A stretch of DNA of 64,000 bases from Schmidtea polychroa (lineage: Eukaryota), in the NCBI GenBank assembly GCA_044892525.1, contig CM097887.1, forward strand, positions 63,364,001 through 63,428,000, in the 5' to 3' direction. This document shows positions 79-46,790 of the stretch, piece after piece. A program made the translations under genes and the position numbers. Within the stretch, counting starts at the first letter, position 1. Each line of letters starts with the position of its first letter. Under the pieces are notes generated by a model that was not told the DNA's origin, searched no databases, and worked only from the letters and a program-made list of their open reading frames with translations.

Positions 79-1102
79 CTCATTTGCTGTTCAATAATTC
101 GATCCGGATCCACCATTCTCGCAATTCAAAGAATCAGCTGAAGATATACCAGATGTTATTTAAACAAATCTTTGTTAAAATATTGGTTTTTATTGATTTT
201 ATTTAAAATTAAATGTACAATAAGTTTGACTAATATATGTTTATACTTTGAACATTTTGGTCTCAGTTTGCATAAATTAGTAAAAAAAGAGTAATAAGAA
301 TAACAGATAAGAATTAATAATTTAAATTTACACTAAAATAAATTAAATAACAAAAGTAAAAAAAAATTAATAAAGAAATAAAATTAAAATAATTAATTAA
401 TTAATTAAATAAAAATAATGAAATAAAAGGAAATGATTAATGAAAATATTTGTTAACTTCTGATTAATTATTGAGTAGTATGGGGGGGGTACCAAAATCC
501 GGCAGGGAGCTCACATCATACTACTTAAATAGTTCTAACTTCGACGATTAAATATATTGAATTTTTGAATTTATCCATTTTTAGCTTTGCGTTGTATGTG
601 GAGATTCTTAAATAATATTAGACATTTTTAGGTCATGAAAAAATAAAAATAACATTAAAAGATAAATATAAAGGAAACAAGTTAAAAATATTGTGAAAAT
701 AAGTAGATAATTGATTAACTTGGATCATATAAAATGTCTGAATAGCATTGAAATTAAAATCGCACACAATAGTAGAATTATTTTACCAACCCACTGTGAG
801 ATAGTAACAATTATGTTTGGAGAACATAAAATGAAATTTTAAAGATTTCTATATTTTATGGCATACTTCAAAAAAAGAATAAATGATATCATGTAACATT
901 GAAAGGAAAGTCGCATACCAACTTGTTAATAAGTCTTACATTATAAGTAGGCAAATTAACAGACATAACTGACAAGCTTCATTGACTAGGTTTTTTACAT
1001 TTTATTTATAAAAGAAAAATAATAAATTAGTCTTCATGTTGGAAAGAACTTTCATCTCATAAAATTTGTCAGAATATATATGATTCAATAATGTCGTATT
1101 GA

Positions 1103-1440
1103 CACCTGTTTGCACAAAATAAACGCATCTATGATAGAGGTTGATGAGTACACTAATTTTAGATGACTCACCAATGTAGAAAATTTAGTTAATTTGTAAT
1201 AATAACCATTTTTGAAATGGCTTTCATGATTTAAAATTTTAAGTAAATTTTAAGGTTTTAAATATTCGATCCCATATTCATATGAGATCATTTTCCAGGC
1301 TCTTAAATATTACTTTATACAACATTTCTATTATAATTAATTTTTAAATATTTTTTTCAGCTTTTTTAAAAATTTATGTATGAAATGAATTTTGGAATTA
1401 TTTCGATTTAATGTAAGTTATATATTTTTAACTATAATTT
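1103..1440 (-). mobile_element. Diverged fragment of the CAC...GTG/TA transposon family (see 16951-17907)
   Basis: Starts CACC and shares ATGAGATCA...CTTAAATATTACT...TTTTGGAATTATTTCG...ATGTAAGTTA blocks with the copies at 17.5-17.9 kb and 43.7-45.8 kb; truncated by an LTR at 1441. Confidence 0.6.
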
Positions 1441-16950: not shown

Positions 16951-17907
16951 CACCTAATTCCGAAATTTAATAACTTCTATAATCTAAAAAAAATCAATAA
17001 ATATATATTATAGGAACACACAAACTTACCTGTGTGTAGAAATTTATCATTCCGGAATTTAGTAACTTTATTATAGGTTTTGTGAAGGTGAGAAAAAAAT
17101 AACTCAACACACCAACACAAAACACATAATGAAAAATACATGTAAAATTCTTATATAGGTTTTTGTTCTGAATCAAATAACTGTTAACATATTGTTAACA
17201 TATTGTTAAAATATAATTATTTTAAAATTATTAAAAAATGCAAGAAAATACTTTTAATTTAGATTCCGACAGCTCTATCTTGAGCTTTAGGGAAAAAGAA
17301 GAAAATACAATGTAAGTTTTATTCATTAAATTACAAAACATTAAAATATTTTATAGTATGTGTGAAGGCAGCATTTCAAATATTGAAGGTCCTTCGAGAT
17401 CTTTTGATTTACAGAAAGAAAAAAAGCCATCGAAAATGAGCTGCAGAAAGAAGATTAAAAAAATTTAAAAAACTATTTCGTTCATGTCCGCCGATTTTTC
17501 CCTAAATGTCTTAAAAAAATAAATGTGTTTGGTGATTAATTTTATTTATTTATAAATATAAAAATATCTAACTTACATTTTAGCGAAATAATTCCATATT
17601 AATGCATAAAATATCATAAATTTCCTAAAAACACCTGAAATTTAATTATTTATATATTATATTATAAATGATGACTAACAGTAATATTTAAGAACTTGAA
17701 TAATGATCTCATAATTATATAAGATCAAAATTCAAGTCTTAAAATATACTTGAAATTAAAAAAATTACCTGAAAACCATTTTTGTTGCTAATAAATTATA
17801 GAATAAATGAAATTGATTAACTTCATTTTCACGTAAATGGTGACTCACCTCAACTGGTGTGCACACCAACGTGAATTATAGAGGTTACTCAATTTCGGAA
17901 TTGGGTG
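16951..17907 (+). mobile_element. Complete 957-bp non-autonomous DNA transposon with CAC...GTG termini and TA TSD (superfamily unresolved: CMC-like or Tc1/mariner)
   Basis: TIRs CACCTAATTCCGAAATTTAATAACTTCTATAAT and the reverse complement of CACCCAATTCCGAAATTGAGTAACCTCTATAAT; TA on both sides; near-identical inverted copy at 43704-44447; carries spliced ORF join(17238..17311,17357..~17468). Confidence 0.85.
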
Positions 17908-41644: not shown

Positions 41645-42260
41645 CACCAAACACAACTGAGATACATTCTCTATAGTTGCGGTTGGCGTATAGAGCAATT
41701 GCTCACTTAGCAATTTAGTGAAATTCATTTACTGAATTGCTCATTATGAATGTACATAAATGTATTTTGAAAATTTAATATAGCCATTTTACAAATGGCT
41801 TTCAGTTAAGATGTTTAATTTTAATTAAATTTTAAGACTTCAATTTTGATCTATATAGATATGAGATCATTAAGTTCTTAAATATTACTTTTAATCAACA
41901 GTATAATTATAAATTATTTTTAATTAATTTTCAGGCTTTTTTAGGATTTTTATGTCATTTATTAGAGTATTTTGGAATTATTTCGAGGGAACGTGAGTCA
42001 GATATGTTTTTAATTATAATTAATTAAATAAATTAATCCCCCAAAATATGTATTTTTTTAAAACATTTTGGGAAAAATCGCCTAGTATGAATAAAATAAT
42101 TTTTTTAATTTTTGTAATTTTTTTTTGCTGGGCTCTATATGAGGGGCTTCTTTCAGGAAAACAAATCTGGATTGAAAAGACATTGAACAAAATTCATCTG
42201 CTCTTGAAAATTTCATTAAAAATATATTTTTAAAAATTTTCAGTCATCTTTTTTTTTCTA
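41645..42260 (-). mobile_element. Diverged copy of the CAC...GTG/TA family (partial)
   Basis: TA-CACC start; ATGAGATCAT..GTTCTTAAATATTACT and TTTTGGAATTATTTCG blocks shared with the other copies. Confidence 0.55.
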
Positions 42261-42841
42261 AAAATTGTCTAAAATAGAATTATTATAGAAACGTATCTCA
42301 GCGGTGCATTTCAATGAATCAAAAGTTTGTATTTGTTTTTTAGTATGTGTTGTTTTAGTGTGCAGTTTTTAATTTTTCTTCCACTTTTCAGATTTCTATA
42401 GTATAAGCTGTATCTGACTGCACTCTAAATGAGAACATCAACGTGAAATCAAAATAAGTATGTATGTTTCTATAATGTAAGATTATTGATTTTTTTCTTA
42501 TATTATAGGAAACGGTTCTCAGTGGTGTTTAGTGTACAAGCCAATTCGCGATATTTTCTCGCTACCAGTAGAAGAATTGTGGTGAAATATCGGAACGAGT
42601 ATCGTGTCGCGGTCACCACTGACCTTTTTAGTAAAATAGTATTACATTAATGAGTGTTAGTAATTGATAAAATCCTGCAAAAGTCAAAGCAAGTCTCCAA
42701 ATAAGCTGATCACCTTGCATCGAGAGTGATTACGACGGTAGGGAGCTAGAAAGAACCGATGTAAGGTCTAAAAAAATTTCAGCTAATCTGACATAACCCC
42801 GAATATGAGTGTTATGTACGCTTTTATGAAGTACATTTTTA

Positions 42842-43703: not shown

Positions 43704-46700
43704 ACACCCAATTCCGAAATTGAGTAACCTCTATAATTCACGTTGGTGTGCACACCAGTTGAGTGAGTCACCATTTATGTGAAAATGAAGTTACTCAATT
43801 TCATTTATTCAATTTATTAAAAATGGTTTTCAGGTAATTTTTTTAATTTCAAGTATATTTTAAGACTTGAATTTTGATTTTATATAGTTATGAGATCATT
43901 ATTCAAGTTCTTAAATATTACTGTTAGTCATCATTTATAATTTATCATTTATAAATATATTAATAACTAAATTTCAGGTGTTTTTTAGGAAATTTATGTT
44001 ATTTTATGCATTAATATGGAATTATTTCGCTAAAATGTAAGTTAGATATTTTTATATTTATAAATAAATAAAATTAATCACCAAACACATTTATTTTTTT
44101 AAGACATTTAGGAAAAAATCGGCGTAAATGAACGAAATAGTTTTTTAAATTTTTATAATCTTCTTTCTGCAGCTCATTTTCGATGGCTTTTTTCTTTCTG
44201 TAAATCAAAAGATCTCGAAGGACCTTCAATATTTGAAATGCTGCCTTCACACATACTATAAAATATTTTAATATTTTGTAATTTAATGAATAAAACTTAC
44301 ATTGTATTTTCTTCTTTTTCCCTAAAGCTCAAGGTAGAGCTGTCGGAATCTAAATTAAAAGTATTTTCTTGCATTCTTTAATAATTTTAAAATAATTATA
44401 TTTTAACAATATGTTAACAGTTATTTATTTCGGAACAAAAACCTATACACCTAACTGCGAAATATAACATTATCTATAATCTAAAAAAAATCAATAAATA
44501 TATATTATAGGAACACACAAACTTACCTGTGTGTAGAAATTTAATGCTGCGAAATTTAACATATTTATTATAGGAATCTAAAAAGTGAGAGAAAATAATT
44601 AAGCATACAAGCACAGCACACATAATGAAAAATACATACAAAATTAAGTAAAGTGTTTTTCATGCGAAATTCACATTGATTATCATATAATTAACATATC
44701 AATATTTTTAAATTATTTAAAAAGTTATGTACAAAAAAACTTTTGAATCAGATTCCGACTGCTCTACCTTGAGCTTTAGGGAAAAAGAGGAAGATACATC
44801 GTAAGATTTAATTATAAAATAATTTAATATATAAAATTTCTTTAGATTTACAGATATTGAAGAAGATCCTTCGACATCTTCGAATTTGCAGGAAAAAAAT
44901 CGCAAATCGTAAATTTTAATAAATTAATATTTTCATAGAATTACAGAAATAGACAAAATTCGAAAGATTACAAAAACTTAAAAAATATTTTATCCATTCT
45001 TTACTAAATGTCTTTAAAAAATAAATGTTTGGTGATTACTTTACTTATTTATAATTATAAAAATATCTAACTTACATTTTTACGAAATAAATCCAAATAA
45101 ATCCAAATAAAATACCATAAAATTCCTAAAAAAACACCTGAAATTTAATTATCAATGTTATATATTATCAATATTATAAATGCTGACTAACAGTAATATT
45201 TAAGAACTTGAATAATGATCTCATAATTATATAAAATCAAAATTCAAGTCTTAAAAATTTCTTCAATTCAAAAACTTACCTTAAAACGATTTTTGAAAAA
45301 TTGAAAAAATGAAATTAAGTTAACATTGTCATATAATTGGTGAGAATTTAATATAATTGGTAAGAATTTTGCATGCATTTTTCATTATGTGTTTTGTGTT
45401 GCTGTGTTCAGTTATTTTTCTCTCACCTTCACAAAACCTACACTTAATTCCACATGTTAAAAGTCTCTATAATACATGTTGGTGTGTTCATCAATCGATG
45501 ACTCACCATTTATGAGAATGTTTATTTCATTTTTTCATTTCAATTCAATTTTATTTATGGTTTTAGAAGTAAGTTTTTTAAATTTAAGTATATTTTAAGG
45601 CTTGAATTTTGATTTTATATAATTATGAGATCATTATTCAAGCTCTTAAATATTACTTGTAATCAGCATTTATAATATATTTATAATATATTGATAATTA
45701 AATTTCAGATGTTTTTTAGGTATTTTATGACATGTTATGAATTTGGAATTATTTCAATAAAATGTAAGTTAGATATATTTTTAACTAAAAAGAAATAAAA
45801 TAATCACCAAACACATTAATTTTTTTAGACATTTAAGCGTATATGGATAAAGTTGTTTTTTAAGTTTTTGTAATCTTCTTTCTCCAGCTCATTTTCAATA
45901 GCCTCTTTGACGATATAGACGGATTTTTTCATTTTCTGAAATTCTATTAAAATATCATTTTTTAAAAAAAATTTATTAAAATTTACGATTTTCGAATTTT
46001 TTTCTTCAATTCCAAAGATGTTGATGGAACTTGTTGAATATCTTCACACAAAGGCGTTTGACTAGAAATATCTGATATGCTGTAAAATATTTTAATTATT
46101 TGTAATTAAATAAAAAAATTCTTACATTGTCAGATCTTCACCTTCGCAAAATGGAAGTGTCTTCAAAGAAATACCTGAAAATCTAAAGAAATATTGACTT
46201 CAAAAATATTTTATAAATAGATCTTACGATGTTTTGTCGTCCTTTTCTCGAAAACTCAAAATTGAGTTGTCAGATTCAAAATTCAAATTTTTTTCAGCCA
46301 TGAATTTTAATAATTTTAAATTAATGATATGTTAACAGTATGTTAATGACTTTCTACTTTCGGAATAAAAAAAGCTATATTAAATTTGCGTGTATTTTAT
46401 ATTATGTGTGCTGTGTTTGTATGTAAAATTATTTTTCTGTCACTTTCTCAATTCCTATAATAAAACTTTCTACATTCGGAACATTAAATTTTTGCACACA
46501 GGTAAGTTTGTGTGTTGCTATAATATAATTTTATCGATATTTTTTTAGATTATAGAAACTCTTATATTGTGGAAACGGGTGTAATAAAACTTTTAACATT
46601 CGGAGCATTAAATTTTTGCACACAGGTAAGTTTGTGTGTTGCTATAATATAATTTTATCGATTTTTTTAGATTATAGAAATTTTTATATTCTGGATTTAT

Positions 46701-46790
46701 GTGTATAATAAAGTTACTAAATTTTGGAACAATAAATTTCTACACACAGGTAAGTTTGTGTGTTCCTATAATATATATTTATTGATTTAA
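43704..46790. mobile_element. Nested cluster of at least three copies of the CAC...GTG/TA family, plus an extra terminal unit
   Basis: Copy 2 (-) starts 43704 and is interrupted at 44448 by copy 3 (+). It resumes at about 45360, is interrupted at 45441 by copy 4 (-, ends 46581), is followed by an extra left-end unit to about 46703, and resumes to about 46790. Confidence 0.8.
45895..46301 (-). CDS. Transposon-borne 4-exon mini-gene, 90 aa, function unknown: join(46301..46228,46182..46126,46079..45987,45943..45895)
   Basis: Three GT-AG introns (45, 46, 43 nt), all phase 2, give an open frame MAEKNLNFESDNSILSFREKDDKTSFSGISLKTLPFCEGEDLTIISDISSQTPLCEDIQQVPSTSLELKKKIRKSISENEKIRLYRQRGY*. Confidence 0.6.

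What the first reader, a model, noticed from the sequence alone, without database searches (positions are those of the whole stretch)
45895..46301. DNA-transposon family carrying a conserved spliced mini-gene built from swappable phase-2 exons
Three clearly diverged subfamilies each keep an ATG, a first exon of exactly 74 nt (...F..DSD.S.LSFREKE..T), GT-AG introns all in phase 2, and an open spliced frame. Copy 1 (17238-~17468) has 2 exons and about 61 aa; copy 3 (44727-44981) has 3 exons and about 59 aa; copy 4 (46301-45895) has 4 exons and 90 aa. Internal exons are symmetric (57, 63, 93 nt) and partly resemble each other (CEG/CED, PSTS), so they can be gained or lost without frameshift. The product is acidic and Ser-rich with a basic tail and no recognisable transposase motif. 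It may be the 5' end of an intron-rich transposase/TnpA-like gene or a stand-alone peptide (regulator, anti-silencing factor) spread by 1-kb elements. This is the best candidate here for an undescribed system.
Basis: partly seen in the sequence, partly recalled or inferred. Interest (0 to 1): 0.72.

Follow-up and report, generated by a model that had tools for sequence, protein, structure and literature searches.

The report
Leftover transposase exons in short transposons
The "mini-gene" is real sequence, but it is the leftover front end of a jumping-gene enzyme (a Tc1/IS630-type transposase with tiny introns) kept in thousands of shortened copies, so it is an ordinary relic rather than a new peptide system.

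Summary
All exon and intron coordinates, the 74-nt first exon, the phase-2 GT-AG introns and the 90/61/59-aa products were reproduced.

The elements are TA-flanked, TIR-bounded non-autonomous DNA transposons of about 0.95-1.15 kb. Each subfamily gives thousands of first-look candidates in a 781-Mb, four-chromosome, AT-rich flatworm genome.

The mini-gene is not a stand-alone gene.
- In other deletion derivatives of the family, the same reading frame runs from "exon 4" into a transposase helix-turn-helix.
- That ORF lies in 332-341-aa open frames at many other places in the genome.

In subfamilies A, B and C the 5' exons are fused out of frame to that tail. The tails differ between subfamilies and even within A. 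Individual copies decay neutrally.

Exon 1 shows modest purifying selection only between the old lineages (dN/dS about 0.2).

Each copy also carries a mir-753 hairpin on the opposite strand. Earlier notes of this scan had already found the mir-753 cargo and an intact Tc1/IS630 element with three ~45-nt introns on other DNA.

RNA reads could not be obtained.

The parts
45441..46703 (-). Copy 4: subfamily C non-autonomous element, TA-flanked. TIRs are at 46703-46680 and 45441-45464. It has an extra tandem subterminal unit at its 5' end. It is inserted into copy 2.
46228..46301 (-). Exon 1 (74 nt, ATG, MAEKNLNFESDNSILSFREKDDKT + 2 nt), the first coding exon of the ancestral transposase gene.
46126..46182 (-). 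Exon 2 (57 nt, phase 2-2). Resembles the start of exon 3 over about 46 nt in a permissive alignment, so a module duplicate is plausible. Flanked by introns 46227-46183 (45 nt) and 46125-46080 (46 nt).
45987..46079 (-). Exon 3 (93 nt, phase 2-2), ending in the basic KKKIRK. It is followed by intron 45986-45944 (43 nt).
45895..45943 (-). 'Exon 4'. The first ~8 codons (ISENEKIR) are the true start of the large transposase exon. After the deletion junction (about 45918/45917) the frame is wrong and stops after LYRQRGY.
45825..45917 (-). Remnant of the transposase C-terminus in its native frame (YIVKEAIENELEKEDYKNLKNNFIHIRLNV*), +1 relative to the mini-gene frame.
45591..45652 (+). mir-753 hairpin (Rfam RF04089, 75.2 bits, gathering score 62) in the 3' part of copy 4, antisense to the transposase remnant.
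16951..17907 (+). Copy 1: complete subfamily A element (957 bp, TA TSD). Mini-gene exons are at 17238-17311 and 17357-17468. The C-terminal remnant in the native frame is at 17420-17491. mir-753 is at 17685-17746 (-).
44448..45360 (+). Copy 3: subfamily B element, 3'-truncated (family members run on about 66 bp to a TIR). It is inserted into copy 2. Exons are at 44727-44800, 44846-44908 and 44939-44981. A mir-753-like hairpin lies at 45197-45257 (-), 60.8 bits, just under the threshold.
43706..46788 (-). Copy 2: subfamily A element, 5'-truncated, split into 43706-44447, 45361-45440 and 46704-46788 by the nested insertions of copies 3 and 4. Mini-gene ATG at 44374 (51-aa product). mir-753 at 43856-43917 (+).

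Best explanation
The region is one of thousands of internally deleted, non-autonomous copies of a Tc1/IS630-type (TA-target, TIR) DNA transposon.

The autonomous gene starts with small exons separated by 43-46-nt phase-2 introns. In the C lineage there are three of them, 74, 57 and 93 nt. They encode an acidic, Ser-rich N-terminal extension ending in KKKIRK. A large last exon follows and encodes the helix-turn-helix DNA-binding domain and the DDE catalytic domain.

Deletions removed most of that last exon. Subfamilies A, B and C keep the promoter-proximal exons. They are joined, out of frame, to the last ~15-30 codons of the transposase, its stop, an AATAAA and the 3' region.

The 'mini-gene' is therefore a relic. 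Its ATG, exon lengths, splice sites and phases are inherited from a real spliced gene. Its C-terminal tail is junk. The copies move only through the transposase of full-length relatives acting on the shared ends.

Shown here: the element anatomy, the deletion junctions, the continuation of the frame into an HTH, the link of the tail to a DDE ORF, and neutral decay of the copies.

Inferred: that the HTH-bearing and DDE-bearing parts belong to one ORF preceded by exons 1-3 in full-length copies, and that the introns are actually spliced.
For: 1. TA duplications and 17-24-bp TIRs are present in all fetched copies. The three subfamilies have 3949, 3172 and 4725 first-look candidates at 90-97% identity.
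2. L059:750-875(-) reads ISENDKIRLINPYENGENYKDFGRLLGISKKSIGTIIS. It hits Pfam HTH_28 (E 2.8e-4) and HTH_SB, the Sleeping Beauty transposase HTH (E 1.1e-3), both below the gathering scores. L045, L039 and L008 show the same start.
3. The tail AIENELEKEDYKNLKN... is preceded in L017:2771-3088 by YRLIHDNASIH...LPPxSQFLNPIE...SMSCPSRFDIVKEAI, the D and E motifs of Tc1/IS630 transposases. This aligns with LPPYSPQLNPIE of a DDE_3-bearing ORF (DDE_3 locus).
4. In the genome the tail lies in open frames of up to 232 aa. The 45-aa catalytic piece has at least 150 hits at 76-96% identity, many in 332-341-aa open frames. At C2:40820347-40820676 both pieces lie in one 232-aa frame.
5. The mini-gene frame and the native tail frame differ in A, B and C. 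The products end differently (RKKIKKI*, KITKT*, RQRGY*). The A consensus and window copy 2 end differently from window copy 1.
6. Within subfamilies, exons change as fast as introns and flanks, and the nonsyn/syn ratio is near the neutral expectation (A 6.2 against 4.1; C 2.5 against 3.5). 24 of 33, 4 of 8 and 21 of 30 copies still fit the model.
7. Exon 1 dN/dS is 0.23 (A-C) and 0.19 (B-C), as expected if the lineages split while coding.
8. At least six different breakpoint pairs (A, B, C, L017, L059, L045 types) fit repeated internal deletion.
Against: - The physical continuity exons 1-3 -> HTH -> DDE -> tail within one element is assembled from overlapping derivatives and from coordinates, not seen directly.
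- Pfam gave no DDE_3 hit on the short catalytic fragments, and the HTH hits are below the gathering scores.
- There is no RNA evidence for splicing.
- The synonymous excess in exon 1 is modest (Fisher p about 0.005-0.01). It is even stronger in an antisense frame that shares its third positions, so it shows a coding constraint but not by itself the strand.
- A and B might be secondary deletions of a C-like element rather than independent derivatives.
Confidence: 0.85

Rival explanations
1. The truncated products are themselves functional: short peptides made from thousands of copies that regulate transposition or silencing (a KP-repressor-like or anti-silencing factor).
For: - ATG, splice sites and an open frame are kept in about 70% of A and C copies.
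- Exon 1 is under some constraint between lineages.
- One further derivative (L059 type, at least 1675 candidates, many identical) keeps most of the first HTH.
Against: - A, B and C products have no DNA-binding part.
- Their tails are out-of-frame, differ between and within subfamilies, and depend on a homopolymer length.
- Copies evolve neutrally, and 70% intact is what young copies 2-5% from their consensus would show anyway.
- No homologue was found.
- No expression data are available.
Confidence: 0.07
2. The spliced ORFs are chance constructs in AT-rich DNA with no coding history.
For: 15-25% of random ATGs in the window give equally long spliced ORFs when GT-AG pairs are chosen freely.
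Against: - The chosen frame leads into a recognisable transposase HTH in longer derivatives.
- Exon 1 has a synonymous excess.
- Donors and acceptors sit at homologous positions in three lineages about 25% diverged.
Confidence: 0.03
3. The exons are a captured fragment of a host gene (transduplication), or the coding strand is the opposite one.
For: The antisense frame over exon 1 is open for 39-68 codons and shows the strongest synonymous bias. The mir-753 hairpin is on that strand.
Against: - The antisense frame shares third codon positions with the sense frame, so the bias is expected there too.
- The antisense peptides are low-complexity F/S/K/L strings without start or splice context.
- The sense frame is continuous with the transposase ORF.
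- The long open frames found in the genome are on the sense strand.
- No host homologue was found.
Confidence: 0.03

Closest known systems
Internally deleted non-autonomous Tc1/mariner elements and mariner-derived MITEs (for example the MLE-derived MITEs described for Bemisia tabaci, PMC8664452, listed; general knowledge for Stowaway/Osmar)
   Same: TA target duplication and TIRs shared with a transposase-bearing relative. Internal deletions with varied breakpoints. High copy number. Remnants of the 5' and 3' ends of the transposase gene.
   Different: The copies are about 1 kb, longer than classical MITEs. They keep a multi-exon 5' gene fragment with intact splice signals, and they carry a miRNA hairpin.
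Intact Tc1/IS630-type transposon with three ~45-base introns near the start of its transposase, noted earlier in this genome (scan note s1-208046)
   Same: Same genome, same superfamily, same layout of tiny introns at the 5' end, and the same idea of tandem exon-intron duplication.
   Different: I could not read that element. Whether it is the autonomous partner of subfamilies A, B or C, or only a relative with the same layout, is untested.
P-element KP repressor and N-terminal fragments of Sleeping Beauty transposase as dominant-negative inhibitors (own knowledge, not tested)
   Same: Truncated transposase products encoded by internally deleted copies.
   Different: Those products keep the DNA-binding domain. 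The A, B and C products here stop before it, and only the L059-type derivative keeps most of the first HTH.
MITE-borne microRNAs such as MADE1 / mir-548 in humans (own knowledge) and Rfam RF04089 mir-753
   Same: A TA-flanked Tc1/mariner-type short element in thousands of copies carries an annotated miRNA hairpin.
   Different: The hairpin is an internal 62-nt stem-loop in the conserved 3' part. It is not formed by the TIRs, and it lies antisense to the transposase remnant.

Membership tests
Tc1/mariner (IS630-Tc1-mariner) superfamily, non-autonomous derivative | TA target-site duplication | tested here: met
   All complete A and C copies and the B copies are flanked by TA on both sides. The nested insertions in the window restore ...TTATTA[TA]GG....
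Tc1/mariner (IS630-Tc1-mariner) superfamily, non-autonomous derivative | Terminal inverted repeats shared within the family | tested here: met
   The 5' and 3' ends match in 21/24 (A), 22/24 (B) and 19/24 (C) positions. An internal direct copy of the TIR core lies near position 99-100 in A and B.
Tc1/mariner (IS630-Tc1-mariner) superfamily, non-autonomous derivative | Relation to a DDE/D transposase with DNA..H and (L)NPIE motifs | tested here: inconclusive
   The motifs are present in L017:2771-3088, attached to the family's 5' region and tail. They align with a DDE_3-bearing ORF only weakly. Pfam DDE_3 gave no hit on the 45- and 60-aa pieces. The D-to-E spacing reads 28 residues, shorter than the usual 34.
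Tc1/mariner (IS630-Tc1-mariner) superfamily, non-autonomous derivative | N-terminal paired-like HTH DNA-binding domain in the parent gene | tested here: inconclusive
   HTH_28 21.3 bits (cut-off 25) and HTH_SB 19.1 bits (cut-off 43) on a truncated 42-aa piece.
Tc1/mariner (IS630-Tc1-mariner) superfamily, non-autonomous derivative | Existence of full-length, potentially autonomous relatives in the same genome | tested here: met
   At least 150 hits to the catalytic piece, many in 332-341-aa open frames. The tail and the catalytic piece lie in one 232-aa frame at C2:40820347-40820676. The ends of these copies were not read.
Stand-alone spliced protein-coding gene | The same reading frame kept over the whole product between lineages | tested here: not met
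   Homologous tail nucleotides are read in different frames in A/B and in C. The native frame is a third one. The tail differs between window copies 1 and 2.
Stand-alone spliced protein-coding gene | Purifying selection on the copies | tested here: not met
   Substitution density in exons is about the same as in introns and flanks, and nonsyn/syn is near the neutral expectation. A constraint is seen only in exon 1 between old lineages.
Stand-alone spliced protein-coding gene | Spliced, translated RNA | not testable with these tools
mir-753 (Rfam RF04089) | Covariance-model score at or above the gathering score | tested here: met
   75.2, 74.3 and 68.4 bits (gathering score 62) in copies 4, 1 and 2. 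Copy 3 scores 60.8 bits.

The most novel reading that the evidence does not exclude
The family may regulate itself through its deleted copies. Thousands of copies could supply (i) N-terminal transposase fragments, of which the L059-type derivative keeps most of the first HTH and could compete for the ends or poison transposase multimers, and (ii) a mir-753-type small RNA from the opposite strand that is complementary to sense transcripts of the family. The modular mini-exons would then be a tunable regulatory N-terminal domain rather than passive baggage.
Probability: 0.07. Interest if true: 0.6.

Novelty: new member of a known kind. Interest (0 to 1): 0.3.

Why it matters
It removes a tempting false lead. 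The neat spliced ORF repeated in three subfamilies is inherited from a transposase gene, so it is not a new peptide system.

It also ties together three things that this scan had noted separately in this genome:
- the ~1-kb TA-flanked elements with subfamily-specific ends;
- their mir-753 cargo;
- a Tc1/IS630 transposase layout with tiny 5' introns.

For annotators of this flatworm genome it means that thousands of short 'genes' with clean splice sites, and thousands of mir-753 loci, are transposon copies. The presence of many 332-341-aa open frames suggests the family may still be active.

Tried and rejected
Exons were searched apart by reference. Spliced translations were computed only inside scripts to check frames.
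- Pfam on the exons and the tail gave nothing meaningful.
- The word search with A exon 2, read from the intron (50 aa), gave no hit. It refuses queries under 40 aa.
- The big HMMER search with the 37-aa tail gave 0 hits among 1.84 billion representatives. These blanks probably mean that this genome's transposon ORFs are not in those libraries.
- I tried to find the partner among DDE_3 hits. The one locus I could still fetch (L061) and a Tc1-like ORF in L053 are unrelated families. BLASTP of the short pieces against L061 was uninformative.
- Literature searches for mir-753 in planarians, and for intron-bearing Tc1 elements in planarians, found nothing specific. One search failed on syntax.
- An antisense coding strand was considered and rejected.
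- A chance ORF was considered and rejected.
- Resemblance of the subterminal ACTTACCTG loop to the U1 snRNA 5' end: there was no Rfam hit, so I dropped it.

Full report
**Setting.** The window is C3:63364001-63428000 of a 781-Mb assembly with four very large contigs and about 22-35% G+C. An earlier scan note calls the genome a flatworm, and the only Rfam family found, mir-753, is a planarian miRNA family as far as I know. I infer a planarian such as Schmidtea mediterranea. This was not tested and nothing depends on it.

**Observation.**
- Copy 4 (minus strand) has exons of 74, 57, 93 and 49 nt at 46301-46228, 46182-46126, 46079-45987 and 45943-45895. Its introns are 45, 46 and 43 nt, all GTAAG/GTAAAT...AG and all phase 2. 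The product is 90 aa.
- Copy 1 gives 61 aa from two exons.
- Copy 3 gives 59 aa from three exons.
- Copy 2, a fourth copy, gives 51 aa.

An open spliced frame alone is weak evidence here. In this window 15-25% of random ATGs reach the same length if GT-AG pairs may be chosen freely, and 3-7% do with GTAA donors. Free choice builds even longer 'ORFs' from copies 3 and 4.

**The elements.**
- Copy 1 is a complete 957-bp element (16951-17907).
- Searches of the window's own genome gave 3949, 3172 and 4725 first-look candidates for the three subfamilies. The scored copies are 90-97% identical. These are lower bounds, not copy numbers.
- Every complete copy is flanked by TA and ends in CACC(T/C)AA...-type inverted repeats that differ between subfamilies.
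- In the window, a 5'-truncated A copy (copy 2) is split by copy 3 (44448-45360) and copy 4 (45441-46703). Both inserted at TA dinucleotides.
- The three consensus sequences are about 70-80% identical over the 5' half, mini-gene included, and 85-96% over part of the 3' half.
- Introns are as conserved as exons, or more so. Between B and C, intron 1 is 84% identical and exon 1 is 69-74%.

**What the exons are.** Two lines of evidence from fetched DNA decide this.

First, other members of the family have different internal deletions and keep more of 'exon 4'.
Similar continuations occur in L045, L039 and L008.
- This piece hits the Pfam helix-turn-helix families HTH_28 (E 2.8e-4) and HTH_SB, the Sleeping Beauty transposase HTH (E 1.1e-3). 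Both scores are below the curated cut-offs, as expected for a truncated 42-aa piece.
- The large exon opens only four codons before its acceptor and has no ATG there. It needs the upstream exons to be translated.

Second, the 3' tail was read by the mini-gene model in the wrong frame.
- In another frame it reads (Y)IVKEAIENELEKEDYKNLKNNFIHIRLNV* in C and AIENELQKEDYKNLKNYFVHVR in A. The A-C differences are mostly synonymous or conservative (counted by eye from the alignment).
- In L017:2771-3088 this tail is preceded by YRLIHDNASIHGGALSPNNYIEHLPPxSQFLNPIESVLSKMKGNIRKTISRTNGFSSMSCPSRFD. These are the second-D and E motifs and the SM(P)xR motif of Tc1/IS630 transposases. The stretch aligns with LPPYSPQLNPIE of a DDE_3-bearing ORF.
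- In the genome the tail also lies in open frames of up to 232 aa. There the match starts exactly where the C-type junction ends.
- The 45-aa catalytic piece has at least 150 hits at 76-96% identity, many in 332-341-aa open frames.
- At C2:40820347-40820676 both pieces lie in one 232-aa frame.

So transposase-bearing relatives exist. The short elements are their deletion derivatives.

**Why it is not a stand-alone gene.**
- In A, B and C the 5' exons are joined to the tail out of its native frame. Each product ends within 6-15 codons of the junction in unrelated residues (RKKIKKI*, KITKT*, RQRGY*).
- The A consensus and window copy 2 end in KSHRK*, while window copy 1 ends 10 residues later, because an A-run differs by one base.
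- Within subfamilies, exons, introns and the rest change at similar rates. In A the rates are 1.4, 2.1 and 1.8%. In C they are 1.9, 1.5 and 2.3%.
- The nonsyn/syn ratio of private changes is near the neutral expectation: 6.2 against 4.1 in A, and 2.5 against 3.5 in C.
- 24 of 33 A copies, 4 of 8 B copies and 21 of 30 C copies still fit the model. That is unremarkable for copies a few percent from their consensus.

**Traces of former coding.**
- Exon 1 has dN/dS of 0.23 (A-C) and 0.19 (B-C). Between A and B all nine differences are non-synonymous.
- The signal is modest (Fisher p about 0.005-0.01).
- An antisense frame that shares the third codon positions scores even better. The pattern therefore shows a coding constraint but not the strand.
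- The strand follows from the continuity with the HTH frame and from the long sense-strand open frames.
- Exon 2 and the start of exon 3 of C resemble each other, and the introns resemble one another. A's single intron is closest to C's intron 2 (these alignments are permissive in AT-rich DNA).
- This fits tandem duplication and loss of exon-plus-intron modules in a fast-evolving N-terminal extension.
- It remains open whether A and B arose by separate deletions from diverged autonomous lineages or by further deletions from a C-like short element.

**Comparison with what is known.** This is the ordinary origin of non-autonomous Tc1/mariner elements. Three features are less usual.
- The parent gene has tiny introns. 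I could not read it, so whether it is the partner is untested.
- Each copy carries a 62-nt hairpin matching Rfam mir-753 above the gathering score, on the strand opposite to the gene. Note s1-237157 had seen this on other DNA but could not say whether such units had spread. They have, in thousands.
- The ends differ by subfamily, with an internal copy of the TIR core. This agrees in part with note s1-244415.

**Limits.**
- No RNA reads were available.
- Pfam DDE_3 was not recovered on the short catalytic pieces.
- Protein-library searches were blank.

**Verdict.** The 'transposase 5' end' reading is supported and the 'undescribed peptide system' reading is not. This is a new member of a known kind, of low to moderate interest.

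Noticed in passing
window 45591-45652 (+), 17685-17746 (-), 43856-43917 (+), 45197-45257 (-): Every copy carries a 62-nt hairpin matching Rfam mir-753 (75.2, 74.3, 68.4 and 60.8 bits; gathering score 62). It lies in the most conserved part of the element, antisense to the transposase remnant. Many annotated or predicted mir-753 loci in this genome are therefore likely to be transposon copies.
   Followed up: partly
window 44447/44448, 45360/45361, 45440/45441, 46703/46704; L034, L052, L033, L032, L017 near B position 115-125; L057 and L052 near the B 3' end: Family members insert into one another repeatedly at the same homologous TA in the subterminal motif TTTATTA|TA|GG, and at a second site, ACGTA|TA|TTATAG. 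This points to a target preference beyond TA.
   Followed up: partly
G000:C3:10758753-10800463 (outside the window): The L059-type derivative (it keeps the first HTH, has at least 1675 first-look candidates, and many copies have a 100% identical 42-aa piece) also occurs as a tandem array with a period of about 1018 bp over about 40 kb.
   Followed up: no
G000, e.g. C1:165405467, C4:32769017, C3:48561369, C1:267673578, C2:147939031: Many copies of the catalytic piece lie in uninterrupted 332-341-aa open frames, so the autonomous family may still be active. At C3:92577883-92578725 there are three hits 354 nt apart in one 417-aa frame.
   Followed up: no
L017:2830-2935: The spacing between the second D (DNASIH) and the E (NPIE) reads 28 residues, against the usual 34 in Tc1. 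The 45-aa piece up to HLPP matches without length change in 150 copies.
   Followed up: no
window 17010-17035, 46735-46760, 46610-46635, 46485-46510 and the consensus 5' subterminal repeats: A conserved hairpin-like motif ACACACAAACTTACCTGTGTGT. Its loop is complementary to a consensus 5' splice site (CAGGTAAGT on the other strand). It is repeated in tandem units of about 125 bp in copy 4. No Rfam hit.
   Followed up: no
L044:1184-1285, L033:3327-3407, L037:1082-1186, L036:2767-2832, L011:3779-3859, L016:1215-1361: More distant short elements keep a related transposase tail (ISRADEFGSMSFQSRFDFLKEAPHIEL), so several sister lineages of this transposon type have left deletion derivatives.
   Followed up: no
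window 41787-42511 (-) and 1102-1437 (-): Older, 70-78% identical partial copies of the same family. The first has a different middle part in place of the mini-gene region.
   Followed up: no
window 45344-45360: Copy 3 stops at ...ATAATTGGTGA, where other B copies run on for about 66 bp to the TIR. It is followed by a 17-bp near-duplicate of the junction (ATAATTGGTGAGAATTT / ATAATTGGTAAGAATTT). This is an aberrant 3' end.
   Followed up: partly
L053:3140-4122 and L061:815-1924: Two unrelated Tc1/IS630-type transposase genes lie near family copies. The genome has at least 2619 first-look DDE_3 candidates. The L061 type occurs in identical copies 22 kb apart at C2:84.54-84.62 Mb.
   Followed up: no
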